Shown here: one piece after another, positions 15,899 to 56,609 of the stretch | Layout of the letters: each line of letters begins with the position of its first letter | Numbering within the stretch: position 1 is the stretch's first letter | DNA from: Macrostomum lignano | Taxonomy: Eukaryota | Direction of reading: 5' to 3' | Assembly: GCA_002269645.1 (NCBI GenBank) | Contig: NIVC01002800.1 | Coordinates: 1 to 64,000, forward strand | DNA: 64,000 nucleotides | Notes under the pieces: model-generated | The model's database searches: none | What the model was told of the DNA's origin: nothing | What the model saw: the letters and a program-made list of their open reading frames with translations, nothing else | Translations under genes and position numbers: made by a program

Positions 15899-15912
15899 GT
15901 GCGTGCGTGGGC

Positions 15913-17330: not shown

Positions 17331-17339
17331 GTGAGTGAC

Positions 17340-37901: not shown

Positions 37902-38117
37902 GTTTATAGTCCTTGAAAGTGGTATGAAATGGTACCTCATGTATCAAAACTAGCCATGATTTGATTAGTATTGTGTTCATTTTTATAGTGAATGGCAGCT
38001 ATCTACATGTAACTCATAATATTATTATAAATAAAAACTTATCTTATCATGTCTTATACAACAAAACCTGACAATTGTTTATTAATGCCTACAATGAATT
38101 TTTAAGCTCTATTCAAA

Positions 38118-38258
38118 ATGAGTGAGGAGATGAATGAAATTCAAAAAGTATTTCAAGATGAGGTGCACAAACAAATTGGCCTAATTGACAAACAGTACCT
38201 ACGCAAACTGCAAGCAGACACATTTCGCTGCTCAATTCGTTGCGTTGAAGATGTTCAG
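38118..38258 (+). CDS. FAM136A: FAM136A exon 1
   Basis: MSEEMNEIQ...YLRKLQADTFRCSIRCVED resembles human IRKMQGLMFRCSASCCED. Donor CAG|GTTAGT, phase 0. Confidence 0.88.
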
Positions 38259-38469
38259 GTTAGTAGCTGGCAGATAAGTATTTCAATTATGTTTAGTATC
38301 TGGTTGTCTTATTTTAAGAAAGTTATTGCTGCTGTCAAGTAGTTCTTTAACATTTGACACTATAGATTGACTAAAGATGGAATTGTGAATTGTTAATTTT
38401 AATGATAAATCCGAAATTAATTTGTTGATAAATGGTAAATTATATATTTATTACCTATTCTAATTTTCT

Positions 38470-39275
38470 AACTCTTAATAATCCGATTGTCCTTAATATC
38501 TAATCCCGGTTCGTTAATCCTTAGTTGCTAGTCCCGAATGGCTAATCCTTAATAGCAAATCCCAATCTTTTTATCCTTAACTGCTAATCCCGATCCGTTA
38601 ATCCTTATTAGCAAATCCCAATCCGTTAATCCTTATTAGCAAATCCCAATCTTTTTATCCTTAACTGCTAATCCCGATCCGTTAATCCTTATTAGCAAAT
38701 CTCAATCCGTTAATCCTTAATAGCAAATCCCAATCTTTTTATCCTTAACTGCTAATCCCGATCCGTTAATCCTTATTAGCAAATCCCAATCCGTTAATCC
38801 TTAATAGCAAATCCCAATCTTTTTATCCTTAACTGCTAATCCCGATCCGTTAATCCTTATTAGCAAATCCCAATCCGTTAATCCTTAATAGCAAATCCCA
38901 ATCTTTTTATCCTTAACTGCTAATCCCGATCCGTTAATCCTTATTAGCAAATCCCAATCCGTTAATCCTTAATAGCAAATCCCAATCTTTTTATCCTTAA
39001 CTGCTAATCCCTATCCGTTAATTTGTCAATTTCTAATCCCAATCTTTTTATCCTTAACTGCTAATCCCAATCGGTTTATCCTTAATCCTGAAAAGCTAAT
39101 CCCGATTGGTTAATCCTCTTTCTAATCCCAATCCGTTAATCCTCAATTGCTAATCCCGATTCGTTAATCCTTCATCGCTATTCCCAACTTCGCTAATCCC
39201 CAATGCCTAATCCCAACATCGCTAATCCCCAATGCCTAATCCCAACATCGCTAACCCCCAATGCCTAATCCCAAA
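38470..39275. repeat. FAM136A intron array: 28-bp AATCCC-core subunits in an 84-bp higher-order repeat, then 27-bp units
   Basis: CTTTTTATCC recurs every 84 bp from 38567 to 38987. Confidence 0.92.
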
Positions 39276-39281
39276 TCGCAG

Positions 39282-39590
39282 GCCTATCCGAGCCCCCGCG
39301 ACTCGCAGAGCTGCCTGGAGCGATGCGGCCAAGTTGTTCAACAGGCTGAGAAAGACATTGAAGTGGAGCTGTCGGGCTTTCAAAACCGAGTCCAGCGTTG
39401 CATGATGGACTGCGGCGACAGGGCGAAGGACGGCCTGCCGGCCTCGCCAAGTTCCGATCAGATCGCCAAAGCTCGAGTCGCTTCGGAGGCGTGCGCGGAG
39501 AAGTGCGTGCGCACCCATCTGGAGCAGCATCTGCCTACGGCAATGAAAAAAATTGGCGAACGACTCAAAGGCTACAAAGTGTCCTTGTAG
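39282..39590 (+). CDS. FAM136A: FAM136A exon 2 (149 aa total, twin CX3C motifs)
   Basis: Acceptor ATCGCAG|GCC. CLERC...ELSGFQNRVQRCMMDCGDRAKD...CAEKC matches the DUF842 pattern CIERC...[22 protein letters not shown]...CVTKC. Confidence 0.92.
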   Translation, partial: AYPSPRDSQSCLERCGQVVQQAEKDIEVELSGFQNRVQRCMMDCGDRAKDGLPASPSSDQIAKARVASEACAEKCVRTHLEQHLPTAMKKIGERLKGYKVSL

Positions 39591-39849
39591 AAATGACTTG
39601 AACTTGGTCTTTGTCTATCCGTGCTTAAATGCGGTTCGAGTTAGAATAGCTTAATGATATTTTAACAACTATTTGTCTCCGACTATTGTTAGTTCAATTC
39701 AGACATCTGAGTTTATTAGTAGCGTTACATTCTGCTTGCAGCAATAATTATTCACTTTTAATTTTGTTAGTTAACTGTTCAAATAAATGAATTGATTTTG
39801 AAGTGTTCAACTCTTCTTTGGGATGATATACTTTTCATGCAGTTGTCCC

Positions 39850-41137
39850 TCATAGTGTATCTGGATTCCCCATAGTGTATCTGAATTCCCCATAGTGTAT
39901 CGGAATTCCCCTATAGTGTATCCGAATTCCCCATAGTGTATCGGAATTCCCCATAGTGTATCTGAATTCCCCCATAGTGTATCTGAATTCCCCTATGGTG
40001 TATCTGAATTCCCTCATAGTGTATCTGAATTCCCCCATAGTGTATCTGAATTCCCCTATATTGTATCTGAATTCCCCCATAGTGTATCTGAATTCCCCCA
40101 TAGTGTATCTGAATTCCCCTATGGTGTATCTGAATTCCCTCATAGTGTATCTGAATTCCCCCATAGTGTATCTGAATTCCCCTATAGTGTATCCGAATTC
40201 CCCCGTAGTGTATCTGAATCCCTCATAGACAGTGTCTGAATTCCCCTATAGACAGTGTCTGAATTCTCCCATAGACAGTGTCTGAATTCTCCCATAGACA
40301 TCTGAATTCCCCCATAGACAGTATTTTAATTCCCCCATAGACAGTGTCTGAATTCCCCCATAGACAGTATCTGAATTTCCCCATAGGCAGTATCTGAATT
40401 TCCCCATAGACAGTGTCTGAATTCCCCCATCGACAGTATCTGAATTCCCCTATAGACAGTGTCTGAATTCTCCCATAGACAGTGTCTGAATTCCCCTATA
40501 GACAGTATCTGAATTTCCCCATAGGCAGTGTCTGAATTCCCCCATAGACAGTGTCTAAATTCTCCCAAAGACAGTATCTGAATTCCCCCATGCTGTATCT
40601 TAATTCCCCCATAGACAGTGTCTGAATTCCCCCAAAGACAGTGTCTGAATTCCCCCATAGACAGTATCTGAATTTCCCCATAGGCAGTGTCTGAATCCCC
40701 CCATAGACAGTGTCTAAATTCTCCCAAAGACAGTATCTGAATTCCCCCATGCTGTATCTTAATTCCCCCATAGACAGTGTCTGAATTCCCCCAAAGACAG
40801 TGTCTGAATTCCCCCAAAGACAGTGTCTGAATTCCCCCATAGACAGTGTATGAATTCCCCCATAGACAGTGTATGAATTCCCCCATAGACAGTGTATGAA
40901 TTCCCCCATAGACAGTGTATGAATTCCCCCATAGACAGTGTCTGAATTCCCCCATAGACAGTGTCTGAATTCCCCCATAGACAGTGTCTGAATTCCCCCA
41001 TAGACAGTGTATGAATTCCCCCATAGACAGTGCCTGAATTTCCCCACAGACAGTATCTGAATTCCCCCATAGACAGTATCTGAATTCCCCCATGCTGTAT
41101 CTGAATTCCCCCATGCTGTATCTGAGTTCCTTCATAG
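39850..41137. repeat. FAM136A-INTS5 spacer minisatellite, 20-23-bp unit CCCCATAG(ACA)GTGTCTGAATT
   Basis: Read directly; the unit lengthens at about 40225. Confidence 0.95.
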
Positions 41138-41186
41138 ACATTTAAATTGTCGGAATTCCCTGCCCCTCAGCAACAGCAGGCCAGCA

Positions 41187-41586
41187 ATGGCCGCACCGCA
41201 GGGCACAGAGCTGGGCCTGTTCATCGCGGCCAGCAGCGGCGGGGTCCAACTCAACTCGGAGGCCATGGCCGACCTGGCATTGAATCTCCTTCGCACAGTG
41301 CCGCAGGCGCGCCTCGCCGTGTTGGAGCACTTCAGCAGCGTGTTTAACGACTACGTGTGCAATAGCGCTTTGCACGCCAAATCAACCCAGTGCGAGCCGG
41401 TGCGCAAGACTCTAGCCAATCATATTAGCCGGCTTTGCTCGGCCTTGGATCAGCTGATGCCAACGGCTCCAACGGGATTCGCTAGCGACGTCTGCCGTTG
41501 GAGTTTGGACCTGTTGGCCAGCTTGTGCCTGAAGTACGCGCCGCATGTGATTGGCGAGGCGCATCAGATCCAGCGGAGCCGGGATG
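41187..41586 (+). CDS. INTS5: Integrator complex subunit 5, exon 1
   Basis: LLRTVPQARLAVLEHFSSVF and WSLDLLASL resemble human [20 protein letters not shown] and WSIDLMGQL. Donor G|GTTGGT, phase 1. Confidence 0.85.
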
Positions 41587-41608
41587 GTTGGTTGCTCAGA
41601 CTGTTGTG

Positions 41609-42215
41609 TGGGATTATGGGACTATGGGATTAGTGGCTGCGGGATTATTGAATTAGGGATTATGGGCTGCTGGATTATTGAATTAGGGATTATGAGCTGT
41701 GATGGGATTAGTGGCTTCGGGATGATTGAATTAGGGATTATGGGCTGTGGGATTATTGAATTAGGGATTATGAGCTGTGGTGGGATTAGTGGCTTCGGGA
41801 TGATTGAATTAGGGATTATGGGCTGTGGGATTATTGAATTAGGGATTATGAGCTGTGGTGGGATTAGTGGCTTCGGAATTATTGAATTAGGGATTATGGG
41901 CTGCTGGATTATTGAATTAGGGATTATCAGCTGTGATGGGATTAGTGGCTTCGGGATGATTGAATTAGGGATTATGGGCTGTGGGATTATTGAATTAGGG
42001 ATTATGAGCTGTGGTGGGATTAGTGGCTTCGGGATGATTGAATTAGGGATTATGGGCTGTGGGATTATTGAATTAGGGATTATGAGCTGTGGTGGGATTA
42101 GTGGCTTCGGGATGATTGAATTAGGGATTATGGGCTGTGGGATTATTGAATTAGGGATTATGAGCTGTGGTGGGATTAGTGGCTTCGGGATGATTGAATT
42201 AGGGATTATGGGCTG
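41609..42215. repeat. INTS5 intron 1 array: 15-bp GGGATTA-core subunits in a 78-bp higher-order repeat
   Basis: Read directly. Confidence 0.93.
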
Positions 42216-42482
42216 TGTTACGTTCAGACTGGGATTATTTACCGGCTTCCAATATACTAAAAATGATGGACTATAATTAGGACATAATTATGAACTTAAA
42301 ATATTTACTGGAAAAACAGAGCAGAGGATTAATAGTTTTAAGAAAAAATGACTGCATGCATATTCGAAGAGGAAATTTTGATTGTAGTACAGCTCGTAAC
42401 TGCTGATTAGTGTACGATATCCGAGATTCGAGCTCGGGACCTAATATATCCTCCTACCCTCCCTTCGAATGCCTAAAAGCAG

Positions 42483-42738
42483 CGGACAGGCAGCCAATGG
42501 AGGAGCGCACCCGCCAATGGCTATCAGTTCCCGGCATCCCCGAGCTGCTGGGCATCGCTCAGCGATTCGGCGAGCGCGACGATTTCTCGGACGGCCTTCT
42601 GGCCGGCCAGCCGCAGCTCGACTGGTTGCTGGCGGCGCCGGCCGCGACTGTCGGACTTTGCGGTCGTCGGAGCGCCTCGGCTTCGGCTGCCGTTCTGGAC
42701 CGTCTGTTGGACCGCGCTATGCGGGACGGCTCGACTAG
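42483..42738 (+). CDS. INTS5: INTS5 exon 2
   Basis: Tandem acceptor AAG/CAG (42480 or 42483). PQLDWLLA resembles PHFDWVVA. Donor AG|GTGAGT, phase 2. Confidence 0.8.
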
Positions 42739-42772
42739 GTGAGTGAGCCTGCTCTGGTGGCTTTATGATGTG

Positions 42773-43310
42773 AGTTAGTTAGTTAGTTAGTTTGTTTGTT
42801 TGTTAGTTAGTTAGTTAGTTAGTTATTTAGTTTGTTAGTTTGATAGTTATTAAGTTAGTTATTTAGTTTGTTTGTTAGTTAGTTAGTTAGTTAGTTAGTT
42901 ATTTAGTTAGTTAGTTAGTTAGTTTGTTAGTTTGTTAGTTTGTTTGTTAGTTAGTTTGTTTGTTTGTTAGTTAGTTAGTCAGTTAGTTAGTTAGTTAGTT
43001 AATAGTAGGTTAGCCAGCCAGTCAGTCAGCCAGTCAGTCAGCCAGTCAGTCAGTCAGTCAGTCAGTCAGCCAGTCAGTCAGCCAGTCAGTCAGTCAGTCA
43101 GTCAGTCAGTCAGTCAGTCAGCCAGTCAGTCAGTCAGTCAGTCAGTCAGTCAGTCAGTCGGTCTGTCAGTCAGTCAGTCAGCCAGTCAGTCAGCCAGTCA
43201 GTCAGTCAGTCAGTCAGTCAGTCAGTCAGTCAGTCAGTCAGTCAGTCAGTCAGTCAGTCAGTCAGTCAGTCAGTCAGTCAGTCAGTCAGTCGGTCTGTCA
43301 GTCAGCCAGT
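42773..43310. repeat. Compound (TTAG/TTTG)n to (TCAG)n microsatellite filling INTS5 intron 2
   Basis: Read directly. Confidence 0.95.
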
Positions 43311-43341
43311 CATGCCTGTCTCATATGCACCCCATTCGCAG

Positions 43342-44027
43342 AGACGGCTCCGGTCGGATGCCGCCCAGCCTGCTGGACCTGCTGGCTCACCTGGCTGTCA
43401 ACCGGCGTGGCGAACTCTGCGCCGCACTGCGCCGACTCTGCCGCAAAGCGGAGTCCGACCGGCGCCAGCTGGCCACCTTCCTGCTGCACCTGGCCGCCTT
43501 TGGCTCGGCCGGGCTGTCCGGCCTGCTGGTCGAGCTGGCCGTCAGATTCGCCTCGGCCAATCCAGAGCAGCTCGCTGGCGCCCTCGACGCGATGCTATCC
43601 GACAATCCCGACGCCGTGGTCGATGCTGCCGAGCGTCGACAGATGGCCGCCTCAGTGCTGCTTCGCTGCCAGGAGCCGTCCGGTCTCCGCATGCTGCGGC
43701 TGCTCCTTCAGGCGGTCCGACGGCGGCCGAACGCCGGCCAGTCGAAGACCTGCGCCTTGTTGCTGGCCAGCGTGTCCTCATCCGCTCTGCGATCTCTGCC
43801 TGGCTCGCTGCAGCCGGGCCAGCAGCAGCAGCAGGAGCCGCAGCAGGCGCTACTTCGCCTGACTGACCGTCTGACAGCCAGGTGTCCGTATTCTGCCCGC
43901 CTGCTAGCTGCGGCCGCTGTCGCTGGCGGCCGGCCCGGCTGTCTGCAACGGCTACTCCGGCCAGCTTTAACCGGACATCCGAAACTGCTGCTGCAGGCGC
44001 TGGATGTTATCGAACTGCACGATAGCG
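43342..44027 (+). CDS. INTS5: INTS5 exon 3
   Basis: Acceptor TTCGCAG|A, phase 2. SLLDLLAHLA. Donor G|GTGAGG, phase 1. Confidence 0.8.
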
Positions 44028-44199
44028 GTGAGGGCTGTTTGGAAGGATTAAGTTATCGGCGTTAAAATATCCCAATAAGTTTCATGTTTCGGCCTTAAAA
44101 TACTCGTATTTGAACAACTTAACTATCGGGTGTCGGTTTAAAAGAACTACTTTTTGAGATATTTTTTGCCCTCTCAAAACTAGTTGCCTATCCTAAAAT

Positions 44200-44600
44200 A
44201 TCGGGCCCCGGCCTTCAAAAACTTTGAAAGTTGAAAGTGCCTTTGAGCTTTGAAAGTGCCAAAAAGGTCTTAATAAACCCCCCTTTGAAGAGATCCGCCT
44301 CTAAAAAAGCTTTCTTAAAAAATCGGCCTTCAAAATGCCTTCTGAAAAATCGGCTTTTGGAAATTGCTTCGAAAGAATCTGCCTTCATAAATTTCTTGAG
44401 AAAATCGGCCTTTAAAAGTGTCTTGAAAAAATAGGCCTTTAAAACTTTCTTGAAAAAAAACCAGCCTTTAAAAGTTTCTTTTGAAGAAATCGGCCTTCAA
44501 AAATGCCTTTTTGAAGAAATCAGCCTTCAATACTGCATTTAAAAAATCGATAAACACCTTATGAAAAAAATTGGCTTTCAAAAGCAACGTTAAGATTTCC
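44200..44600. repeat. Highly degenerate AT-rich repeat (AAAATCGGCCTTCAAAA core) in INTS5 intron 3
   Basis: The core recurs about every 25-35 bp. Confidence 0.6.
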
Positions 44601-44706
44601 TTATCTTTGAAAATTTCTTGACCTCTTTAAGGACTCGTAAGGATTTAATTCGAAATGATTTTTATAACAATCAAGTCAGCGGTAAGTCAATAAAACTGCC
44701 TTCTAG

Positions 44707-44957
44707 ATGCCGCAGACGCCATTGCCGACTGCCTGCTTCAGCGGCTGCTGTCTGCTGCCGATTGGCGCCTTCGCCGGCACCTCCTACGCAGCGCCGGCGC
44801 TCTCCTAGCCGAAGAGGCCAGCCAGGAGCGGCGCCGATTGGCTGGCGCTCTCGGCCGCCAGCTGCCTCGCCTGCTGCGCCTGCTGGACGCCGGGCCGGGG
44901 CCGGCCGGTGTTGCCGACCTGCTGGCACTGACTGGCCGGCTGGAGTTTCACAGATCT
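44707..44957 (+). CDS. INTS5: INTS5 exon 4
   Basis: Acceptor TTCTAG|AT, phase 1. Leu/Ala/Arg-rich helical sequence. Donor TCT|GTGAGC, phase 0 (3' boundary less certain). Confidence 0.7.
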
Positions 44958-45074
44958 GTGAGCGCTGCCGCATTTACTGAACTGATTGGGGATTTGGGCG
45001 CTTTGCATAGGCTTGAAATTTCACATGAGTCTTGTTACTCACTTTTGCTAGCTTATAACTTCACTCTGGCAGCT

Positions 45075-45417
45075 TCGAGCTTGAGAAGTTTTGATCTTGT
45101 GAAGTTTCGAGTTTGAGAAGTTTTGAGCTTGTGAAGTTTCGAGTTAGAGAAGTTTTGATATTGTGAAGTTTCGAGTTTGAGAAGTTTTGATCTTGTGAAG
45201 TCTCGAGCTTCAGAAGTTTTGATATTGTGAAGTTTCGAGTTTGAGAAGTTTTGATATTGTGAAGTTTCGAGCTTGAGAAGTTTTGATCTTGTGAAATTTT
45301 GAGCTTGAGAAGTTTTGATATTGTGAAGTCTCGAGCTTGAGAAATTTTGATCTTGTGAAGTCTCGAGCTTGAGAAGTTTTGATCTTGTGAAGTCTCGAGC
45401 TTGAGAAGTTTTGATCT
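45075..45417. repeat. 32-bp minisatellite GAGCTTGAGAAGTTTTGATCTTGTGAAGTCTC in INTS5 intron 4
   Basis: Read directly. Confidence 0.93.
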
Positions 45418-45448
45418 GTAACGTAACTGTAACGATTCTATTTACAAG

Positions 45449-46036
45449 GCACCCTTAGCCGATTGCATAGCAGCCACAGGCGCTCTGTCCCGAGCTGTCG
45501 TTCACTGCCTGTTGGAATCTCCAGCCGATGAGACCGTCGGTCAAGTCGACAGCCTGGCCGACCAGTTGGCCGACCAGCTGCTGGGCGCCGCCCGTCTCTA
45601 TCCGCACTGCCGCGTCGCCGCCATCCGCCAGCTGGTCCAAGCCATGCTCTCGCCGTCGCCTCCGCCGCCTCCGCCTCCGTCGGCGTCGGTCGTAGCCGTC
45701 GACTCGCCGTCAACCGGCAGTGTGGCTTTAATCACTTCGCGTCCGCCGAGTGTCGACGTCGCCGGCCAGCTGTTGAGACGGCGGGCACCGCTGGCCAATC
45801 GTTCTGCTGCCGCCGACGCTGCCAGCTCAATGTCGATGACGTCGGCTGCCGAGATGCGCTGGTCAGCCGAGCAGGACCTGCTGGCTCTGCTGCACCGGCT
45901 GGTTATGGACGGCGACGCGGCCAAGTGTGGCGGCAGCGGCGGCTCCCAGGCCGCTGCCCGAGCCCTGGCCGTGGCCCTGTCTCAGGCCGCCTGTCCTGAG
46001 GGCGCCCTTCTGGCTATGGCCGCCACGCTAGACAAG
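45449..46036 (+). CDS. INTS5: INTS5 exon 5
   Basis: Acceptor TTTACAAG|GCA, phase 0, 196 open codons. Donor AAG|GTGAGG. Confidence 0.78.
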
Positions 46037-46485
46037 GTGAGGCTGAGGTAGAGAGAGATGAGGCTGAAGTGGGGAGATGAGGCTGCGGTAAAGAGATGAG
46101 GCTGAAATGGGGAGATGAGGCTGAGATGGGAAGATGAGGCTGAGATGGGGAGATGAGACTGCGGTAAAGAGATAAGGCTGAGGTGGGGAGACGAGGCTGA
46201 GATGAGGAGATGAGGCTGCAGTGGGGAGATGAGGCTGAGATGGGAGATGAGGCTGAGATGGGAGATGAGGCTGAGGTGGGGAGATGAGGCTGAGATGAGG
46301 AGATGAGGCTGCAGTGGGGAGATGAGGCTGAGATGGGAGATGAGGCTAAGGTGGGGAGATGAGGCTGCGGTAAAGAGATAAGGCTGAGGTGGGGAGATGA
46401 GGCTGAGATGCGGAGATGAGGCTGAGATGGGGTGATGAGGCTAAGATGAGGAAATGAGGCTGAGATGGGTAGATGAGGTTATACT
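46037..46485. repeat. 16-17-bp repeat GAGATGAGGCTGAGATGG filling INTS5 intron 5
   Basis: Read directly. Confidence 0.92.
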
Positions 46486-46530
46486 AGGTAGAGAACAGGC
46501 TAAAGAAAGTCAGGTGATTTTCCACCCCAG

Positions 46531-47055
46531 GTGGGTCTGGAGTCCGGCACCCGAGTCCTGTCGCAGTTCCGCGCCCGCCCAGTCGCCCTGTGGGGCGCCC
46601 TGGAGCTCGCGGCCAGACTTGGCGAGCCGTGCGTGCTGGCCGAGGCCGCTCCGCTGCTGGCCGCCCTGCTCACCGGCCTGACCGTCCACTGGGGCTCCCG
46701 CCGGCAGCAGCCGCAGTCGTCGGCGTGCGCCGGCGCCGCCGCAGAGACCCGCCGGTTGATCGGCCTGCTCCGGGCCGGCCGCCTGCTGTCTCCTCCGCTG
46801 GACCGTCTGGACGCTATTGTCGACTGTCTGACACCGGCCGAGCTGCACCCGCTGCTCGAGGAGCTTCGCCGAGCCGTGCTGGAGGCGGCCGACTGGGCCA
46901 GACGGGAAGGACCGCAGGCGGTGGCAAAGGCCGGATTGGTCAGCGCCGAGCGGGCGGCGCCGCTGCTCAACCGGCTGCTGCATCGTCACGTGACCCGGCT
47001 GGCCCCGCTGTTTGGCGAGTTCTTTAGCCCGGGTGGCGGCTTGGCCTGTCACTGA
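46531..47055 (+). CDS. INTS5: INTS5 exon 6 (terminal; about 901 aa total)
   Basis: Acceptor CACCCCAG|GTG. LLAALLTGLTVHW, PPLDRL...LTPAELHPLL and LLHRHVTRLAPLF resemble the INTS5 C-terminus. The six exons sum to 2706 nt, in frame. Confidence 0.85.
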   Translation: MGLESGTRVLSQFRARPVALWGALELAARLGEPCVLAEAAPLLAALLTGLTVHWGSRRQQPQSSACAGAAAETRRLIGLLRAGRLLSPPLDRLDAIVDCLTPAELHPLLEELRRAVLEAADWARREGPQAVAKAGLVSAERAAPLLNRLLHRHVTRLAPLFGEFFSPGGGLACH

Positions 47056-48955
47056 TGATTTGATAATCTGACTGGTGATTTAATAATCTGACTGGTGATT
47101 TGATAATCTGACTGGTGATTTATTAATCTGACTGATGATTTGATAATCTGACTGGTGATTTGATAATCTGACTGGTGATTTAATAATCTGACTGGTGATT
47201 TGATAATCTGACTGGTGATTTGATAATCTGACTGGTGATTTGATAATCTGACTGGTGATTTGATAATCTGACTGGTGATTTGATAATCTGACTGGTGATT
47301 TGATAATCTGACTGGTGATTTGATAATCTGACTGATGATTTGATAATCTGACTGGTGATTTGATAATCTGACTGGTGATTTGATAATCTGACTGGTGATT
47401 TGATAATCTGACTGGTGATTTGATAATCTGACTGGTGATTTGATAATCTGACTGATGATTTGATAATCTGACTGGTGATTTAATAATCTGACTGGTGATT
47501 TAATAATCTGACTGGTGATTTGATAATCTGACTGGTGATTTGATAATCTGACTGGTGATTTGATAATCTGACTGGTGATTTGATAATCTGACTGGTGATT
47601 TAATAATCTGACTGGTGATTTGATAATCTGACTGGTGATTTGATAATCTGACTGGTGATTTGATCATCTGACTGATGATTTGATCACTGATGATTTGATC
47701 GCTAATGATTTGATAATCTGACTGGTGATTTGATAATCTGACTGGTGATTTAATAATCTGACTTGTGATTTGATAATCTGACTGGTGATTTGATAATCTG
47801 ACTGGTGATTTGATAATCTGACTGATGATTTGATAATCTGACTGATGATTTGATAATCTGACTGGTGATTTGATAATCTGACTGGTGATTTGATAATCTG
47901 ACTGGTGATTTGATAATCTGACTGGTGATTTGATAATCTGACTGGTGATTTGATAATCTGACTGGTGATTTGATAATCTGACTGGTGATTTGATAATCTG
48001 ACTGGTGATTTGATAATCTGACTGGTGATTTGATAATCTGACTGACTGATGATTTGATAATCTGACTGATGATTGGATAATCTGACTGACTGATGATTTG
48101 ATAATCTGACTGATGATTTGATAATCTGACTGACTGATGATTTGATAATCTGACTGATGATTTGATAATCTGACTGACTGATGATTTGATAATCTGACTG
48201 ACTGATGATTTGATAATCTGACTGACTGATGATTTGATAATCTGACTGATGATTGGATAATCTGACTGATGATTGGATAATCTGACTGATGATTTGATAA
48301 TCTGACTGACTGATGATTTGATAATCTGACTGATGATTTGATAATCTGACTGACTGATGATTTGATAATCTGACTGATGATTGGATAATCTGACTGACTG
48401 ATGATTTGATAATCTGACTGATGATTGGATAATCTGACTGACTGATGATTTGATAATCTGACTGATGATTGGATAATCTGACTGACTGATGATTTGATAA
48501 TCTGACTGATGATTTGATAATCTGACTGACTGATGATTTGATAATCTGACTGATGATTTGATAATCTGACTGACTGATGATTTGATAATCTGACTGACTG
48601 ATGATTTGATAATCTGACTGATGATTTGATAATCTGACTGACTGATGATTTGATAATCTGACTGATGATTTGATCACTGATGATTTGATAATCTGACTGG
48701 TGATTTGATAATCTGACTGATGATTTGATAATCTGACTGATGATTTGATAATCTGACTGATGATTTGATAATCTGACTGATGATTTAATAATCTGACTGA
48801 TGATTTGATAATCTGACTGATGATTTGATAATCTGACTGATGATTTGATAATCTGACTGATGATTTGATAATCTGACTGACTGATGATTTGATAATCTGA
48901 CTGATGATTTGATAATCTGACAGACTGATGATTTGATAATCTGACTGATGATCTG
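47051..48955. repeat. INTS5-CDC7 spacer minisatellite, 20/24-bp unit TGATTTGATAATCTGACTG(G/A), about 1.9 kb
   Basis: Read directly; begins at the INTS5 stop codon. Confidence 0.98.
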
Positions 48956-49326
48956 ACGGCTTCAAATTCAAATTCGGCTTGTTAGCTATTATTAATTTTT
49001 GGCAAGCATTTTTCATCAGTTCATTAACAGTTAACTTATTTTCTGTTAGTAGCAACATGTGTATGTATGAGTTAGTGTTGGTTGCCGATTGAAATATTTC
49101 GTGTACTAATTATATAATAGATATTACACAGCCAAGTTCCTTGTTGCTTTTAAAAACGCAGTTCAGCCAATTAAAAATATTCATCGCGCGCTTTTTTCAC
49201 TCCAACTTTAAATTTTAGTTGCAAAATACAAAAAAATGCCTACTGACAAGTAGGATAGAGCGACTATCATTGCTTTTCTCGGTTAGATAGCTAAATAGTG
49301 TGTATAAATTTTTTCAGCGGCATATC

Positions 49327-49719
49327 ATGAAACGCCGCCGCTCGCCAGCCGCCGATGCGGCGACTCCGTCAGCCTCGTCGGATCCGATGTTCAAAACGCT
49401 GGAATTCGCTCGCAGTCTGAGGACTATACGGGATTATTTTAATTTAATAGACAAATGCGGCGAAGGCGCTTTCTCGGCCGTGTTCAGAGCCCGGCCGCTG
49501 ACTGGCGGGGACCGTTGCTTAGCGGTTAAGGTCATCAGCCAGTGCTGCGACTTGCAGCGCACCTGTACGGAGATTCTTCTGTTGAAGGCCTTAAAAGGCT
49601 CGCCGAATGTCATCAGCCTGGTGTCTGCTGTGCGTGAGGCTGAAACTGTGCTGCTGGTGATGGACTACGTTGAGCACAGGCCGTTTGTGGAGTTCTATAG
49701 ACAGCTGCAACCTGATCAG
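49327..49719 (+). CDS. CDC7: CDC7 (DDK catalytic subunit) kinase exon 1
   Basis: GEGAFSAV Gly loop, LAVK, alphaC Glu (TEILLL), MDYVEHRPF resembling CDC7 MPYLEHESF. Donor CAG|GTGCGT, phase 0. Confidence 0.9.
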
Positions 49720-49772
49720 GTGCGTTGGCTGCAATTGTGTGCTATTATCCCCTTTTTAGATTCCTCTTATTC

Positions 49773-51125
49773 TTAGAATCGACCTGTTTCTTAGAATCGT
49801 CGTTCAGTTCTTAGAATCTTCGCTTCTTATGAGTAGAAACGGCTTTTTTTCTAATAATTTTATTGCTTTTTGGAATCGGCTCATTTCTTAGAATCTTTGC
49901 TTTTTAAAATAGGCTTGTATTTCTAGGAATTTTATTGCTTCTTAGAATCGGCTGCTTAGAATATTATTGTTTCTTAAAGTCGGCTCATTTCTTAGAATCT
50001 TATTGTTTGTTAGAATCGGCTCATTTCTTAGAATCTTTGCTTTTTAAAATAGGCTTGTATTTCTAGGAATTTTATTGCTTCTTAGAATCGGCTGCTTAGA
50101 ATATTATTGTTTCTTAAAGTCGGCTCATTTCTTAGAATCTTATTGTTTGTTAGAATCGGCTCATTTCTTAGAATCTTTGCTTTTTAAAATAGGCTTGTAT
50201 TTCTAGAAATTTTATTGCTTCTTAGAATCGGCTGCTTAGAATATTATTGTTTCTTAAAGTCGGCTCATTTCTTAGAATCTTATTGTTTGTTAGAATCGGC
50301 TCATTTCTTAGAATCTTTGCTTTTTAAAATAGGCTTGATTTCTAGAAATTTTATTGCTTCTTAGAATCGGCTGCTTAGAACATTATTGTTTCGTAGAATA
50401 GGCTTATTTCGGAGAATTTTACTGTTTTTTAAAATTGGCTTATTTCTTACAATCTTATTGTTTCTAAGAATCGATTCCTTTTTGAGAATCTTGTTTCTTA
50501 GAATCGGCTCATTTTTAGAATCTTATTGTTTCTAAGAATCGATTCCTTTTTGAGAATCTTGTTTCTTAGAATCGGCTCATTTTTAGAATCTTATTGTTTC
50601 TAAGAATCGATTCCTTTTTGAGAATCTTGTTTCTTAGAATCGGCTCATTTTTAGAATCTTATTGTTTCTAAGAATCGATTCCTTTTTGAGAATCTTGTTT
50701 CTTAGAATCGGCTCATTTTTAGAATCTTATTGTTTCTAAGAATCGATTCCTTTTTGAGAATCTTGTTTCTTAGAATCGGCTCATTTTTAGAATCTTATTG
50801 TTTCTAAGAATCGATTCCTTTTTGAGAATCTTGTTTCTTAGAATCGGCTCATTTTTAGAATCTTATTGTTTCTAAGAATCGATTCCTTTTTGAGAATCTT
50901 GTTTCTTAGAATCGGCTCATTTTTAGAATCTTATTGTTTCTAAGAATCGATTCCTTTTTGAGAATCTTGTTTCTTAGAATCGGCTCATTTTTAGAATCTT
51001 ATTGTTTCTAAGAATCGATTCCTTTTTGAGAATCTTGTTTCTTAGAATCGGCTCATTTCTTAGAATCTTATTGCTTCTCCTTTCTTAGAACAGATCTGTT
51101 TCTCAGAACTGTTTTTTCCTAGAAT
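49773..51125. repeat. CDC7 intron array: TTCTTAGAATC-core units as 140-bp then 68-bp higher-order repeats
   Basis: Marker spacing of 140 bp (49911, 50051, 50191, 50331), then 68 bp from about 50470. Confidence 0.92.
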
Positions 51126-51179
51126 CAGCACCAGCCCAACCAGTGCCTGAGCTGACAGCCATCCCGGCACTATCTGCAG

Positions 51180-51941
51180 GTGCAGCACTACATGCGCTGC
51201 CTGCTGGATGCCCTCAGCCGAGTGCACTCAATGGGCGTAGTGCATCGCGACGTGAAGCCCAGCAACGCGCTGTACAATCCGGCCACCGGCCAGTTTGCTC
51301 TGGCCGACTTTGGTCTGGCCCACCTGGTGCAGCAGCAGCCGCAACGGCCGAGACCGGCCGCCCGGCCAGCCGCTGTTGGTTCGGCCGCGGTTTTCCCGTC
51401 CAATAAGTCCGCGGCCGCCTCGTGCCGCTGCGCCTCCGGGCTCGTGTGCGGCCCCTGCCTGTCCAAGCGGCCGATCCGAGCGCCACGCGGCGGCACCAAC
51501 GGCTACAGGCCGCCGGAAGTGCTGCTGCAGGCCGACAGCCAGGACTGTCGGGTGGACACCTGGGCGGCCGGCTGCATTCTGGCCGCTTTCCTGTCCGGCC
51601 GGCAGCCGTTTCTCTGGTGCCGCTCGGACACGGAATGCCTGTACCTGCTGTGCTGCCTGTTCGGCCTGAACTCCATGCGATCCGCTGCCGCCGCTGTCGG
51701 GCGCGAGCTGCGCGTGCTGCCAGTCGCCTCGGAGACTCTGCCAGAAGCCGAGTTCCCCTGTCGGCGAGACCGGCTGTCCAGCGTCTGTCGGTTGATACGC
51801 GGAACCGAGGCCGGCAGCTCCGATGGTCCGTCGTCGTCAGTGTTTGACCTGCTCAGCGGATTGCTGCAAGCCGATCCGGCGAAGCGGCTGACAGCTGCCG
51901 ACGCTCTCAAGCATCCGTACTTTGCTTCGGCTAAGCGCTAA
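51180..51941 (+). CDS. CDC7: CDC7 kinase exon 2 (384 aa total)
   Basis: HRDVKPSNALY, DFGLA, the CDC7-specific Zn motif CRC-x4-CGPC followed by RAPRGGTNGYRPPE, and FLSGRQPF. Confidence 0.93.
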   Translation: MQHYMRCLLDALSRVHSMGVVHRDVKPSNALYNPATGQFALADFGLAHLVQQQPQRPRPAARPAAVGSAAVFPSNKSAAASCRCASGLVCGPCLSKRPIRAPRGGTNGYRPPEVLLQADSQDCRVDTWAAGCILAAFLSGRQPFLWCRSDTECLYLLCCLFGLNSMRSAAAAVGRELRVLPVASETLPEAEFPCRRDRLSSVCRLIRGTEAGSSDGPSSSVFDLLSGLLQADPAKRLTAADALKHPYFASAKR

Positions 51942-51989
51942 TCCGACTGGGCTTTGCTTTGTTAACCGTAGTAGCCGGATTGGGGGTGT

Positions 51990-52520
51990 TGGTAACTGGG
52001 ATTGTTGACCTTAGCAACCGGGTTGTTGACCTTATCAACCAGGTTGTTGACCTTAGCAACTGGGTTGTTGACCTTATCAACTGGTGTTGGCCTTAGCAAT
52101 TGGGTTGTTTACCATGCCAACTGGGTTGTTAACCTTAGCAACCAGGTTGTTGATCTAATCAACCAGGTTGTTGACCTTAGCAACTGGGTCGTTGACCTTA
52201 GCAACCGGGTTGTTGACCTTAGCAACCAGGTTGTTGACCTTAGCAACCGGATTGTTCACCATGCCAACTGGGTTGTTGACCTTAGAAACCAGGTTGTTGA
52301 CCTTAACAGAGCAGCGGGTTCTTGACCTTAGCAACCAGGTTGTTGATCTTAGCAACTGGGTTTTTGACCTTAGTAACTGGGTTTTTTTCACCATGTCAAC
52401 TGGGTTTTTGACCTTAACAGAGCAGCGGGTTGTTGACCTGGCAACCAGGTTGTTGACCTTAGCAACCAGGTTGTTTTCCTTAGCAACTGGATCGTTGACC
52501 TTAGCAACTAGGTTGTAGAC
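51990..52520. repeat. 21-bp minisatellite TTGTTGACCTTAGCAACCAGG after the CDC7 stop codon
   Basis: Read directly. Confidence 0.9.
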
Positions 52521-52974
52521 ATTAGCATAGCAGCGGGGTTGTTTCATACAATATAAGATATCGACCTTAGCAACCAAATTTGTTATCTTAAGAAACCATG
52601 CTGTTAGCCTTAGTAACAGAATTTTTGCTCTGTTAAAAACCAGTTTTTGTGCTATTATTGACCTGTGCATTTCCTATGTTAGTGAGCATTTCTGTATAAT
52701 CTATGCATATACGAGCTACCAATGCCCAACGTATTTGAATGTTTACAGCCAATGCCAGGAATCTTGACCGTCTGGCTGCACTATTTATTAATTTTTAATG
52801 CTGTTATAATATTTTCGCGTCAACTATATAATTTTTGTGCAACTAATGGCAGTGCATTTCTTAGAATTTTATCTAAAGTACAAGTATTTTTCATATTAAA
52901 AATGCTTTTATGCCTGTCGAATATTAGCAGGCTGAGATATCCTTACTTGGGATTGGAAATAGGTTCGGATGTTC

Positions 52975-54102
52975 TCACGACTGGGTTATTCTCACCTTGA
53001 GATTGGAGATAGTTGAGATATTCTCACCATGAGATTAGAGATCGGCTGGGATATTCTCACCTTGATATCGGCTAAGATTTTCTCACCTTGATATCGGCTG
53101 GGATTTTCTCACCTTGATATCGGCTGGGATTTTCTCACCTTGATATCGGCTGGGATTTTCTCACCTTGATATCGGCTGGGATTTTCTCACCTTGATATCG
53201 GCTGGGATTTTCTCACCTTGATATCGGCTGGGATATTCTCACATTGAAATTGGAGATCGGCTAGGATATTCTCACCTTGAGATTGGGGATCGGCTGGGAT
53301 ATTCTCACCTTGAGATTGGGGATCGGCTGGGATATTCTCACCTTGAGATTGGGGATCGGCTGGGATATTCTCACCTTGAGATTGGGGATCGGCTGGGATA
53401 TTCTCACCTTGAGATTGGGGATCGGCTGGGATATTCTCACCTTGAGATTGGGGATCAGCTGGGATATTCTCACCTTGAGATTAGGGATCGGCTGGGATAT
53501 TCTCACCTTGAGATTGGGGATCGGCTGGGATATTCTCACCTTGAGATTGGGGATCGGCTGGGATATTCTCACCTTGAGATTGGGGATCGGCTGGGATATT
53601 CTCACCTTGAAATTGGGGATCGGCTGGGATATTCTCACCTTGATATCGGCTGGGATATTCTCACCTTGAGATTGGGGATCGGCTGGGATATTCTCACCTT
53701 GATATCGGCTGGGATATTCTCACCTTGAGATTGGGGATCGGCTGGGATATTCTCACCTTGAGATTGGGGATCGGCTGGGATATTCTCACCTTGAGATTGG
53801 GGATCGGCTGGGATATTCTCACCTTGAGATTGGGGATCGGCTGGGATATTCTCACCTTGAGATTGGGGATCGGCTGGGATATTCTCACCTTGAGATTGGG
53901 GATCGGCTGGGATATTCTCACCTTGAGATTGGGGATCGGCTGGGATATTCTCACCTTGAGATTGGGGATCGGCTGGGATATTCTCACCTTGATATCGGCT
54001 GGGATATTCTCACCTTGAGATTGGAGATCAGCTGGATTATTCTCACCTTGAGATAGTAGATCGGATGGGATATTTCCACCTTGAGATTGATATTCTCACC
54101 TT
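52975..54102. repeat. 33-bp minisatellite TTCTCACCTTGAGATTGGGGATCGGCTGGGATA (with a 25-bp variant) upstream of PSMG3
   Basis: Read directly. Confidence 0.95.
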
Positions 54103-54206
54103 TAGACCAGCGATCTAAAACTTCTATAATTTCAACCTATTAGATGGTGCTAGACTTCGCTATATCAACTCTCTTGCTTGTTATCACAATTCCAGCAGGA
54201 ACCAGC

Positions 54207-54575
54207 ATGCCAAAGGTGTACAAAACCACTCACCAGTTCGATGGCGACCTGCCCGCACTTGTTCACCTGAGCGTGCTGGAATTCTCTGACCGCCTGCTCC
54301 TGTCGGTGTCCGACTCGGGCAAGCTGGGCTGCTTCTTTGTGCCGGCGCCCGGCCTCCAGGCCGATGACGCGGAGGCTCGGTTCGGCGCGCCAAAATCGCC
54401 GGCCACCTCGCGGGCAGCGCGTCTCCTTGGCGACAGTCTTCGCCGAGGCGCCGACGCCGGGAGTAGCGCATCAACGGCGCCTGTCGTGAGCCTGTGCCTC
54501 GCGAACGAGAGCCGCAGTCGGGTCCAGCTGCTCTGCGAATTGGTGGCTCAATTTCGCACCTGGCCGCAGGCGTGA
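54207..54575 (+). CDS. PSMG3: Proteasome assembly chaperone 3 (PAC3), intronless, 122 aa
   Basis: FSDRLLLSVSDSGKLG resembles human FSSHILVVVTQFGKMG. The C-terminal VVSLCL...LCELVAQFRTW resembles VLLAVAV...LREVIRVCQVW. Expected size. Confidence 0.78.
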   Translation: MPKVYKTTHQFDGDLPALVHLSVLEFSDRLLLSVSDSGKLGCFFVPAPGLQADDAEARFGAPKSPATSRAARLLGDSLRRGADAGSSASTAPVVSLCLANESRSRVQLLCELVAQFRTWPQA

Positions 54576-55262
54576 ATTATTTTGATAATTTTTGAAAATG
54601 AAAATACTACTTGCAGCGTCTGTTTGGAGTTTTTTCCTGTAATTTTCTACGAGCAATAAAATTCTAAAAGTGCGGCATTTATTTTTGTACTTTGGTGTAA
54701 ATATCAATTGAAAGAATAATACAAGGAAATTGCCAAGCTGTTGTAATGTTGAAAATAATTCTAACTGCGCTTTGTTTCTTAATACCAGCTTTTGTATTTT
54801 TATTCTTACTATACAATAGGAAATCGAACTTAATAAATAGTACTAAAGGCTTATTGAGGGGTAATGCGCTGCACTGAAAACACAGAAAATAATTGCAGGA
54901 AAAACCCAGTTCCGATGTCTAAATCCTCTTGGCGGCACACGAGTATACTATAAGAGCATATCTTCGCTTTGGGGATATTACGAGTATTCCAGTTTCTTAG
55001 AAATAAAAAGAACTGTTTGGTGCCGTACAGTGTAGATGTAAATTGAATGCATTGGGTACGTTAAGATGCCCTAGGTACACGTATCTTTTGCAGATTAGCA
55101 CTGCATTACAGTAATATATAATATAGTTCACTTTAAGCATTGGAACACAGGCGGGTGGTAGCGCTGAAGGAAACGGCCACCGGAACAGTTTTACGATCGA
55201 AGTTTTGGAATGAAACTTATTTGCACTGTCCTAATCTTCAACATTCTCGTATTCTTTATGGC

Positions 55263-55852: not shown

Positions 55853-56467
55853 TCACTGCAAGCCGAACGATACAGACGACATTCGAACTGTCGGGGCGGC
55901 GGCCGAGATCCTTCTCAGCTGAATCGGGGCCTTCGACTCCTTGTCCGACTTCGCTGAGGCTGACCCGCTCCGGGACTGTCGCGGGCCGAGCGGCTGTCGC
56001 GGCTTGCCGGACGCGTCCCGAACGCCGCCCTCCCGCGCCACGTTGGACTGATTCTCGCCGTCTTCCCGAGCCCCGACGCCCAGCAGCAGCATGTCGAGCA
56101 GGCCGATGATGTTCAGCTGGCGTTGCAGCGGAAAATTCTTCGTCGACAAGAAGATGCCGCGCCGTTCGCGTTTAGTCATGTGCCAGGGAGCGTACAGGAT
56201 GCGCCCGGTCTCGCGATCGCGGAGCGGCTCCGTGGGCGACTTGAGGTCGTAGACTTCGCCATACTTGTGGTGTGTGATGCCGACTCGCTGGTAGCCGTAG
56301 ACCAGCGGCTTGTTGTCCGGCACGAACTCGTTGCACTGTAGGCGGGCCTTGGCGGTGTCGCGGTACTCCTCCAGGTTCACGCTGCCCGGCAGGATGCCCT
56401 CGATGAGCCGCTTGGCCTGGCGGGTGGCGCCGTGAAATGCGTGGGATTGTAAAGTGTAAGTAGGCTG
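55853..56467 (-). CDS. Unrecognised protein, exon 2 (terminal)
   Basis: Tandem acceptor CTGCAG|CAG|CCT, phase 0. Non-repetitive GC-rich ORF to TGA at 55853. Confidence 0.7.
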   Translation of the reverse strand, partial: QPTYTLQSHAFHGATRQAKRLIEGILPGSVNLEEYRDTAKARLQCNEFVPDNKPLVYGYQRVGITHHKYGEVYDLKSPTEPLRDRETGRILYAPWHMTKRERRGIFLSTKNFPLQRQLNIIGLLDMLLLGVGAREDGENQSNVAREGGVRDASGKPRQPLGPRQSRSGSASAKSDKESKAPIQLRRISAAAPTVRMSSVSFGLQ

Positions 56468-56609
56468 CTGCAGTACGAGTTTCGTTAGAGGGGATCGGCA
56501 AGCTAACAAAGTTTCGCCGGATTTAGCATTTAGTGAAGTGAAATAGCATTTGCATTTATGGAATTAATAATTTTGCTTCGGGGCAACTAAATATAGCGCC
56601 TGCTAAACT

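What the first reader, a model, noticed from the sequence alone, without database searches (positions are those of the whole stretch)
38101..54660. Candidate trans-spliced operon FAM136A-INTS5-CDC7-PSMG3 with spacers made mostly of tandem repeat
Seen: four unrelated conserved genes run head-to-tail on +, with stop-to-ATG gaps of 1.6, 2.3 and 2.3 kb. About 1.3, 1.9 and 1.6 kb of those gaps is tandem repeat, leaving only about 300-600 bp of unique DNA each. Every ATG sits 8-16 nt after a splice-acceptor-like site: TTTTTAAG 38106, CCCCTCAG 41170, TTTTTCAG 49317, TTCCAG 54195. I see no nearby upstream donor partner for them. An AATAAA follows FAM136A (39782) and PSMG3 (54654). Known: flatworms use spliced-leader trans-splicing and have polycistronic gene clusters. 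Inference: one polycistronic unit (replication kinase, Integrator, proteasome chaperone, mitochondrial protein) whose intercistronic regions tolerate kb-scale minisatellites, unlike the roughly 100-bp spacers of nematode operons.
Basis: partly seen in the sequence, partly recalled or inferred. Interest (0 to 1): 0.75.

Follow-up and report, generated by a model that had tools for sequence, protein, structure and literature searches.

The report
Flatworm trans-spliced gene cluster, repeat-filled spacers
Four same-strand genes of the flatworm Macrostomum lignano look like a spliced-leader operon with tandem-repeat-filled gaps, which is a published genome-wide feature of this species, so the locus is an ordinary example.

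Summary
The window is Macrostomum lignano contig NIVC01002800.1:1-64000 (assembly Mlig_3_7).

FAM136A, INTS5 and CDC7 are confirmed. The fourth ORF (122 aa) cannot be shown to be PSMG3.

Spliced-leader (SL) trans-splicing at three of the four acceptors (38106, 41170, 54195) is supported in two ways:
- The deposited 5'-partial CDSs begin at the first in-frame codon after each AG.
- In the two other genomic copies, the acceptor AG reads TG, once GCATG. These are the last bases of the SL. The likely cause is that the assembly was polished with RNA-seq reads.

CDC7's acceptor (49317) has no such support. Its annotated CDS starts at 49333.

INTS5 and CDC7 share one transcriptional-unit prefix (Mlig020213.g1 and .g2). 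After subtracting repeats, all three gaps fall under the published 1-kb operon threshold. Measured from the poly(A) signal (PAS) to the next acceptor, they are about 80-155 nt.

A single promoter remains unproven.

The tandem repeats are not special to the spacers. All 7 introns carry them too (76% of intron length against 79% of spacer length). Repeat-inflated operon spacers in this species were published in 2021 (Ustyantsev & Berezikov). Interest is low.

The parts
38099..38106 (+). SL trans-splice acceptor of FAM136A (TTTTTAAG|)
   Evidence: The deposited 5'-partial CDS (PAA55152.1, 'LFKM...') starts at 38109, the first in-frame codon after the AG. Copy c158 reads TTTTTATG here, which matches the end of the SL.
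38118..39590 (+). FAM136A (DUF842). CDS exons are 38118-38258 and 39282-39590, giving 149 aa. The intron is 77% tandem repeat (38490-39274).
39782..39787 (+). AATAAA poly(A) signal of FAM136A
   Evidence: conserved in all three copies
39857..41140 (+). Spacer-1 minisatellite: 23-nt unit, about 58 copies. It is 1284 nt here, 621 nt in c882 and 669 nt in c158.
41163..41170 (+). SL trans-splice acceptor of INTS5 (CCCCTCAG|). Only 30 unique nt lie between the repeat and this site.
   Evidence: The deposited CDS ('NSRPAM...') starts at 41172. c882 and c158 read CTCTG| here.
41187..47055 (+). INTS5, six CDS exons: 41187-41586, 42480-42738, 43342-44027, 44707-44957, 45449-46036 and 46531-47055. Every intron holds its own tandem array.
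47051..48956 (+). Spacer-2 minisatellite: 20-nt unit, about 93 copies. It starts inside the INTS5 stop codon. It is 1901 nt here, 2359 nt in c882 and 879 nt in c158. It probably lies inside the INTS5 3'UTR.
49170..49175 (+). ATTAAA, a candidate poly(A) signal of INTS5
49303..49308 (+). TATAAA. It is either a variant poly(A) signal of INTS5, with cleavage near 49330, or a TATA box of CDC7, with a transcription start (TSS) near 49331.
   Evidence: The annotated CDC7 CDS starts at 49333.
49310..49317 (+). Acceptor-like site before CDC7 (TTTTTCAG|). It matches the published motif but its use is not verified.
   Evidence: No SL footprint in any copy.
49327..51941 (+). CDC7 kinase. CDS exons are 49327-49719 and 51180-51941, giving 384 aa. 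The intron is 86% tandem repeat.
51994..52527 (+). Spacer-3 minisatellite 1, 21-nt unit. Lengths are 534/534/325 nt in window/c882/c158.
52895..52900 (+). ATTAAA, a candidate poly(A) signal of CDC7 in the 453-nt unique island
52981..54106 (+). Spacer-3 minisatellite 2, 33-nt unit. Lengths are 1126/1192/1125 nt in window/c882/c158.
54190..54195 (+). SL trans-splice acceptor of the 122-aa ORF (TTCCAG|)
   Evidence: The deposited CDS ('GTSMPK...') starts at 54198. c158 reads TGCATG| here, which equals the last 6 nt of the SL.
54207..54575 (+). Its identity is unconfirmed.
54655..54660 (+). AATAAA poly(A) signal ending the cluster
55853..57602 (-). Convergent 273-aa gene on the minus strand. It bounds the cluster downstream.

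Best explanation
The four genes are an ordinary example of a Macrostomum lignano SL trans-spliced gene cluster. It is most likely one polycistronic unit.

Proposed mechanism:
1. RNA polymerase II starts upstream of FAM136A and reads through all four genes.
2. Each upstream mRNA is cut and polyadenylated at its own signal: AATAAA 39782, ATTAAA 49170 or TATAAA 49303, ATTAAA 52895, and AATAAA 54655.
3. Each mRNA 5' end is made by joining the single 35-nt spliced leader to an acceptor 9-16 nt before the ATG.

The kilobase-scale minisatellites are neutral, fast-evolving filler. The same kind of filler occupies every intron. It sits in the discarded intercistronic RNA of spacers 1 and 3, and in a 3'UTR in spacer 2.

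Shown: gene order, the repeats, the acceptors, and indirect RNA support for SL addition at three sites. Inferred: one promoter, read-through transcription, and trans-splicing of CDC7.
For: 1. Organism and system. The contig is M. lignano Mlig_3_7. This species has one SL. About 30% of its genes are trans-spliced and about 15% lie in operons.

2. Annotated CDS starts. The deposited gene boundaries were set from SL-read and poly(A)-read peaks by the TBONE pipeline, which cuts assembled transcripts at those peaks. The 5'-partial CDSs of FAM136A, INTS5 and the 122-aa ORF start at 38109, 41172 and 54198. Each is the first in-frame codon after the proposed AG.

3. SL footprints.
- In the two other copies of the locus, the acceptor A is T at exactly these three sites. 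Once, TCCAG is GCATG, the SL 3' end.
- Only 4 other AG-to-TG differences occur in about 16 kb of aligned sequence. That gives P of about 1e-6.
- The assembly was polished with Pilon using RNA-seq reads, which explains the pattern.

4. Shared transcriptional unit. INTS5 is Mlig020213.g1 and CDC7 is Mlig020213.g2. The prefix names a transcriptional unit, or a cluster of them at 95% identity. Two unrelated genes can share it only through a transcript that spans both.

5. Distances.
- Repeat-adjusted stop-to-acceptor distances are 296, 361 and 594 nt. All are under the published 1-kb operon threshold.
- Poly(A)-site-to-acceptor distances are about 81, 125 and 154 nt, close to the published mode of about 100 bp.

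6. No room for a promoter before INTS5. Only 30 unique nt separate the spacer-1 repeat from the INTS5 acceptor.

7. Conservation across copies. All three copies keep the gene order. The arrays vary about 1.1- to 2.7-fold in length while their flanks are 91-100% identical.
Against: - No read-level RNA data could be examined. No cDNA contigs of these genes exist in the searchable collections.
- FAM136A and INTS5 have different transcriptional-unit prefixes.
- CDC7's annotated CDS starts at 49333, which is 6 nt after its ATG and not at the acceptor. It has no SL footprint. A TATAAA lies 24 nt before the ATG, inside 361 nt of unique AT-rich DNA that could be its own promoter.
- A shared transcriptional unit can also arise from contiguous read coverage of abutting but independent transcripts.
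- About 60% of trans-spliced genes in this species are not in operons.
- Gene order is not kept around CDC7 in the monogenean Cichlidogyrus casuarinus.
Confidence: 0.5

Rival explanations
1. Split cluster. FAM136A and INTS5 are co-transcribed, but CDC7 has its own TATA-box promoter (TATAAA 49303, TSS near 49331) and is not trans-spliced. The 122-aa ORF is then either co-transcribed with CDC7 or independent. INTS5 and CDC7 share a transcriptional unit only because the INTS5 3'UTR abuts the CDC7 start, so read coverage is continuous.
For: - The annotated CDC7 CDS starts at 49333, 25-30 nt after TATAAA.
- No copy shows an SL footprint at 49317.
- 361 nt of unique AT-rich DNA precede CDC7.
- An in-frame Met20 (49384) lies before the kinase domain, so a transcript starting at 49331 could still code for the kinase.
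Against: - TBONE cuts only at SL or poly(A) peaks, not at transcription starts. The boundary at 49332/49333 is therefore more simply a poly(A) site of INTS5.
- TTTTTCAG at 49317 is a perfect match to the published trans-splice motif.
- Such a transcript would lose the conserved ATG at 49327.
Confidence: 0.25
2. Four independent genes. Each has its own promoter and is trans-spliced as a monocistronic transcript. The head-to-tail order is chance, and the spacers are ordinary repeat-rich intergenic DNA.
For: - Most trans-spliced genes in this species are not in operons.
- Raw gaps of 1.6-2.3 kb are not short for this genome.
- Three same-strand neighbours have a chance probability of about 1/8.
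- Gene order is not conserved in another flatworm.
Against: - Unique DNA before the INTS5 acceptor is only 30 nt, and before the 122-aa ORF only 89 nt.
- Repeat-adjusted distances fall in the short mode that the published analysis assigns to operons.
- INTS5 and CDC7 share a transcriptional unit.
Confidence: 0.2

Closest known systems
Macrostomum lignano SL operons (Wudarski et al. 2017, PMC5730564; Ustyantsev & Berezikov 2021, PMC8629364)
   Same: - Same species and the same single 35-nt SL.
- Same-strand trans-spliced genes.
- Intergenic distances inflated by simple repeats, and a repeat-adjusted distance near 100 bp and under 1 kb.
- Conserved housekeeping or cell-cycle genes.
   Different: Nothing essential. 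Four genes is in the upper tail of size: 75% of the published operons have two genes and 18% have three. This particular cluster is not described in any paper I could search.
Caenorhabditis elegans SL2-type operons
   Same: A polycistronic pre-mRNA is resolved by 3' end formation plus SL trans-splicing. After repeats are removed, about 100 nt lie between the poly(A) site and the next acceptor.
   Different: There is one SL and no SL2 specialisation. Raw spacers are 1.6-2.3 kb because of minisatellites. No Ur-like element (the U-rich intercistronic signal of nematode operons) was looked for or is known here.
C. elegans SL1-type operons and Ciona operons (no intercistronic region)
   Same: This may apply to the INTS5-CDC7 junction only. 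If the annotation boundary at 49332/49333 is the INTS5 poly(A) site, that site lies 12-15 nt beyond the CDC7 acceptor. The two processing events would then abut or overlap, as in these operon types (described in PMC12582326).
   Different: This rests on inference from an annotation boundary and a TATAAA hexamer. It was not observed in reads.
Parasitic flatworm polycistrons (Schistosoma, Echinococcus)
   Same: SL-resolved same-strand pairs. The median intercistronic distance in S. mansoni is 99 bp.
   Different: Those studies use 200-300 bp raw thresholds, so this cluster would be missed without repeat adjustment.

Membership tests
M. lignano operon, operational definition of Ustyantsev & Berezikov 2021 | Immediately adjacent transcripts in the same orientation, not interrupted by an opposite-strand transcript | tested here: met
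   The deposited gene calls on the contig show FAM136A, INTS5, CDC7 and the 122-aa ORF all on +. The first minus-strand gene starts at 55853.
M. lignano operon, operational definition of Ustyantsev & Berezikov 2021 | The downstream gene of each pair is SL trans-spliced | tested here: inconclusive
   INTS5 and the 122-aa ORF have indirect support: the CDS starts right after the AG, and other copies carry SL footprints. CDC7 has a motif match only; its annotated start is 49333 and it has no footprint. No reads were available.
M. lignano operon, operational definition of Ustyantsev & Berezikov 2021 | Repeat-adjusted intergenic distance below 1000 bp | tested here: met
   The distances are 296, 361 and 594 nt even when measured from the stop codon. 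They are about 81, 125 and 154 nt from the likely poly(A) sites.
Operon in the strict sense (one promoter, one primary transcript) | A single primary transcript spans all the genes | not testable with these tools
   There is only partial, second-hand support. INTS5 and CDC7 share the transcriptional-unit prefix Mlig020213. FAM136A has a different prefix. The name of the 122-aa ORF is hidden.
Operon in the strict sense (one promoter, one primary transcript) | No independent promoter before the downstream genes | not testable with these tools
   Sequence only shows how little unique DNA is available before each acceptor: 30 nt for INTS5, 361 nt for CDC7 and 89 nt for the 122-aa ORF.
FAM136A (Pfam DUF842) | Pfam PF05811 match above the gathering score | tested here: met
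   32 bits on exon 1 and 76 bits on exon 2, against a cut-off of 25.1
Integrator subunit 5 | INTS5_N and INTS5_C domains | tested here: met
   INTS5_N scores 69.8 bits (cut-off 27). INTS5_C scores 25.3 bits, just under its cut-off of 27.
CDC7 kinase | Best match to CDC7 rather than to other kinases | tested here: met
   Human CDC7 gives 5e-56 over residues 33-380. The next family, CK2, gives 5e-31. The best outside hit is named Cdc7 in Cichlidogyrus.
PSMG3 / PAC3 proteasome assembly chaperone | Significant sequence or fold similarity to PAC3 (Pfam PAC3, PDB 2Z5E) | tested here: not met
   No Pfam hit at E<=10 and no PDB hit. No homologue among 1.8e9 representative proteins. The low-confidence model gave no Foldseek match. 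BLASTP against 2Z5E gave E=0.17. Equal length (122 aa) and a positionally matching FS..L..V...GK.G stretch remain only a lead.

The most novel reading that the evidence does not exclude
The INTS5 poly(A) site (about 49330, driven by TATAAA 49303) may lie just downstream of the CDC7 trans-splice acceptor (49317). One pre-mRNA molecule could then yield either a mature INTS5 mRNA or a mature CDC7 mRNA, but not both. That would be a mutually exclusive processing switch between an Integrator subunit and a replication kinase.

Separately, the private minisatellite in every intron and every spacer of this unit may not be neutral. It contrasts with the repeat-free 5.4 kb upstream. The arrays could be transcription-coupled, or selected for spacing or for slowing the polymerase.
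Probability: 0.08. Interest if true: 0.55.

Novelty: already known. Interest (0 to 1): 0.2.

Why it matters
The locus adds little. SL operons with repeat-inflated spacers are a published genome-wide property of M. lignano. The gene boundaries used here are already in the public annotation.

Two by-products may be useful:
- Raw-distance thresholds of 200-300 bp, as used for other flatworms, would miss operons like this one.
- The Mlig_3_7 assembly appears to carry SL-derived bases (TG or GCATG in place of AG) written over some trans-splice acceptors by RNA-seq-based polishing. That could distort acceptor-motif statistics drawn from this assembly. Conversely, it can be used as a sequence-only marker of real SL junctions.

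Tried and rejected
- **cDNA contigs carrying the SL.** Exact look-up and three homology searches returned only the genome-derived proteins. There were no run-assembled (Logan) transcripts of M. lignano.
- **Gene IDs in the literature.** I searched the paper library and the supplements of three papers for the gene IDs and found nothing.
- **Are the non-ATG CDS starts artefacts of a homology-based gene caller?** I suspected this at first. I rejected it because NCBI names them 'partial' Mlig genes and the paper describes TransDecoder ORFs on TBONE-cut transcripts.
- **Is the CDC7 ATG (49327) itself an SL footprint?** Rejected. An independent protein derived from the older ML2 assembly (A0A1I8HSW1) reads NFFQRHIMKRRR straight through it.
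- **Are the three further AG/TG differences at 37651-37689 extra footprints?** Rejected. They sit at an indel and homology breakpoint between the copies.
- **Enrichment of the SL 3' 7-mer in the window.** None: 6 found against 12.6 expected.
- **Bacterial promoter/terminator scan.** Irrelevant for a eukaryote, and dominated by the repeat unit.
- **Rfam.** No hit in the window.
- **PSMG3 identity.** Five methods were tried and all were negative or insignificant.
- **Synteny.** Only one other flatworm CDC7 locus was reachable (Cichlidogyrus). Its neighbours are unrelated and on the other strand.

Full report
**What the window is**

The fourth ORF of the finding is carried by two contigs of NCBI assembly GCA_002269645.1. 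The window matches one of them base for base: NIVC01002800.1, with window coordinate equal to record coordinate. NCBI names the proteins 'BOX15_Mlig...' from Macrostomum lignano.

**The observation**

- Stop-to-ATG gaps are 1596, 2271 and 2265 nt.
- Tandem Repeats Finder puts 1284, 1901 and 1660 nt of array inside them.
- TTTTTAAG, CCCCTCAG, TTTTTCAG and TTCCAG end at 38106, 41170, 49317 and 54195. They lie 11, 16, 9 and 11 nt before the ATGs.
- AATAAA is at 39782 and 54655.

An acceptor-like site at that distance precedes 20.5% of the 570 ATGs outside repeats. Four of four is therefore unlikely by chance (P of about 0.002). Two of the four match the strict published motif, which precedes 2.8% of ATGs.

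Gene models:
- FAM136A has two exons and 149 aa.
- INTS5 has six exons and about 902 aa.
- CDC7 has two exons and 384 aa.
- The fourth gene is a single-exon 122-aa ORF.

Pfam and PDB searches confirm FAM136A, INTS5 and CDC7. The name 'PSMG3' fails every test I could run: Pfam, PDB sequences, phmmer over 1.8 billion representative proteins, and AlphaFold2 with Foldseek. BLASTP against human PAC3 gives E=0.17. The match is positionally sensible but not significant.

**The repeats are not a spacer feature**

The window is 38% tandem repeat. All seven introns of these genes hold their own array, covering 45-90% of each intron and 76% overall. The three spacers are 79% array.

The arrays sit at the same places in the two other copies of the locus, on NIVC01000882.1 ('c882') and NIVC01000158.1 ('c158'). 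Their lengths differ:

| Array | window | c882 | c158 |
|---|---|---|---|
| Spacer 1 | 1284 | 621 | 669 |
| Spacer 2 | 1901 | 2359 | 879 |
| Spacer 3, array 1 | 534 | 534 | 325 |
| Spacer 3, array 2 | 1126 | 1192 | 1125 |

The unique flanks are 91-100% identical, and gene order is kept in all three copies. Intron arrays vary in the same way. The arrays behave as fast-evolving passengers.

**What is already published**

- Wudarski et al. 2017 (PMC5730564) assembled transcriptional units from RNA-seq and found that many of them are precursor RNAs. They cut them into genes at SL-read and poly(A)-read peaks with a pipeline called TBONE, then called ORFs with TransDecoder.
- Ustyantsev & Berezikov 2021 (PMC8629364) give the single SL as CGGTCTCTTACTGCGAAGACTCAATTTATTGCATG and the trans-acceptor motif as [T/C]TNCAG. 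They estimate 30% of genes trans-spliced and 15% in operons.
- The same paper states that repeats inflate intergenic distances in operons. After subtracting repeats, the distances peak near 100 bp, and 1 kb is used as the operon threshold.

**Evidence for trans-splicing at this locus**

No read data or cDNA contigs were reachable. Two indirect lines exist.

1. *Annotated CDS starts.* The deposited CDSs are 5'-partial, and each starts at the first in-frame codon after the proposed AG:
   - FAM136A at 38109 ('LFKM...')
   - INTS5 at 41172 ('NSRPAM...')
   - the 122-aa ORF at 54198 ('GTSMPK...')

   This is what a TransDecoder ORF on a transcript cut at the SL junction would give.

2. *SL footprints in the other copies.* The acceptor is altered toward the SL 3' end in the other copies:
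   - FAM136A: AAG becomes ATG in c158.
   - INTS5: CAG becomes CTG in c882 and c158.
   - The 122-aa ORF: TTCCAG becomes TGCATG in c158, which equals the last six SL bases.

   Elsewhere in about 16 kb of aligned unique sequence, only four AG-to-TG differences occur. Three hits on four named sites therefore has P of about 1e-6. The assembly was polished with Pilon using Illumina DNA and STAR-mapped RNA-seq. SL-bearing reads overhanging the junction by a few bases would write exactly these bases. I read them as polishing footprints that mark true SL junctions. A biological origin, such as conversion from cDNA, would point to the same junctions.

**CDC7 is the exception**

TTTTTCAG|C at 49317 is a perfect motif match and is conserved in all three copies. 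Even so, no copy has a footprint, and the deposited CDS starts at 49333, six bases after the ATG. The ATG itself is genomic, because an ML2-derived UniProt protein reads through it.

TBONE cuts only at SL or poly(A) peaks, and no AG precedes 49333. The simplest reading is a poly(A) site of INTS5 at about 49330-49332, driven by TATAAA at 49303. The alternative is that TATAAA is a TATA box and CDC7 has its own start at about 49331. I cannot decide between the two.

**Evidence for co-transcription**

- INTS5 on c882 is Mlig020213.g1 and CDC7 is Mlig020213.g2. The prefix names a transcriptional unit or a cluster of them. Two unrelated genes can share it only via an assembled transcript that spans both.
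- Only 30 unique nt lie between the spacer-1 array and the INTS5 acceptor, and only 89 nt before the 122-aa ORF.
- Taking the canonical signals as poly(A) sites, the repeat-adjusted distances to the next acceptor are about 81, 125 and 154 nt. These are close to the published mode. Even the stop-to-acceptor distances (296, 361 and 594 nt) pass the 1-kb rule.

Against co-transcription:
- FAM136A has a different unit prefix.
- Shared units can come from abutting read coverage.
- Most trans-spliced genes in this species are not in operons.
- The one other flatworm CDC7 locus I could reach, in Cichlidogyrus casuarinus, has unrelated neighbours on the opposite strand.

**Verdict**

I give about 0.5 to a single four-gene unit. 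I give about 0.25 to a split at CDC7 and about 0.2 to four independent genes. SL addition at three acceptors I consider likely (about 0.9).

The kind of system and the role of repeats are already published, so interest is low. The side observation about SL footprints in the assembly may be of practical use.

Noticed in passing
window 38105, 41169, 54192-54194, compared with L005 (c158) 7742, 10000, 20990-20992 and L004 (c882) about 12122: The trans-splice acceptor AG reads TG in other copies of the locus, and once TCCAG reads GCATG. These are the 3'-terminal bases of the spliced leader. The assembly was polished with RNA-seq reads, so they are probably polishing artefacts. They mark real SL junctions and could bias acceptor-motif statistics taken from Mlig_3_7.
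   Followed up: partly
window 38259-51179 (7 introns), and the whole window: Every intron of FAM136A, INTS5 and CDC7 contains its own distinct tandem array, covering 45-90% of each intron. The window is 38% tandem repeat, against 15% reported for the genome. The 5.4 kb directly upstream of the FAM136A intron array (33095-38489) has none.
   Followed up: partly
window 47051-47055: The INTS5 stop codon (TGA 47053-47055) lies inside the first unit of the 20-nt minisatellite, so the array begins within the last codons of the gene. All three copies show this.
   Followed up: no
window 45449-45695: The deposited INTS5 model of this copy (PAA55153.1, 592 aa) uses an alternative acceptor at 45524|45525. 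That skips 76 nt, shifts the frame and stops at 45695. A full-length ORF of about 902 aa is intact in the window, as annotated (904 aa) on the two other copies.
   Followed up: yes
window 49303-49333: The annotated CDC7 CDS starts at 49333, six bases after its ATG and with no AG before it. TATAAA at 49303 could be a poly(A) signal of INTS5, which would put that 3' end just beyond the CDC7 acceptor. It could instead be a TATA box of CDC7.
   Followed up: partly
window 38107-38123, 41171-41350, 54196-54273: The SL ends in AUG. After splicing, that AUG would open out-of-frame upstream ORFs of 5, 59 and 25 codons on FAM136A, INTS5 and the 122-aa ORF. The FAM136A upstream ORF ends in AUGA, overlapping the start codon. 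On CDC7 the SL AUG would be in frame.
   Followed up: no
window 36691-37524: An 834-nt element with 26-nt terminal inverted repeats (36692-36717 and 37497-37522) is present only in this copy, about 580 nt upstream of the FAM136A acceptor. It is probably a copy-specific insertion of a small DNA transposon.
   Followed up: partly
window 2033-2692, 3064-3927, 11976-17300 (+ strand): Upstream on the same strand are a C2H2 zinc-finger ORF, a reverse-transcriptase fragment and a multi-exon cadherin gene whose introns are again filled with tandem arrays. No deposited gene lies in the 10 kb before FAM136A.
   Followed up: partly
L005 (NIVC01000158.1) 17186-21373: The third copy keeps intact CDC7 and 122-aa ORF sequences (99% identical), but neither is in the deposited annotation of that contig.
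   Followed up: no
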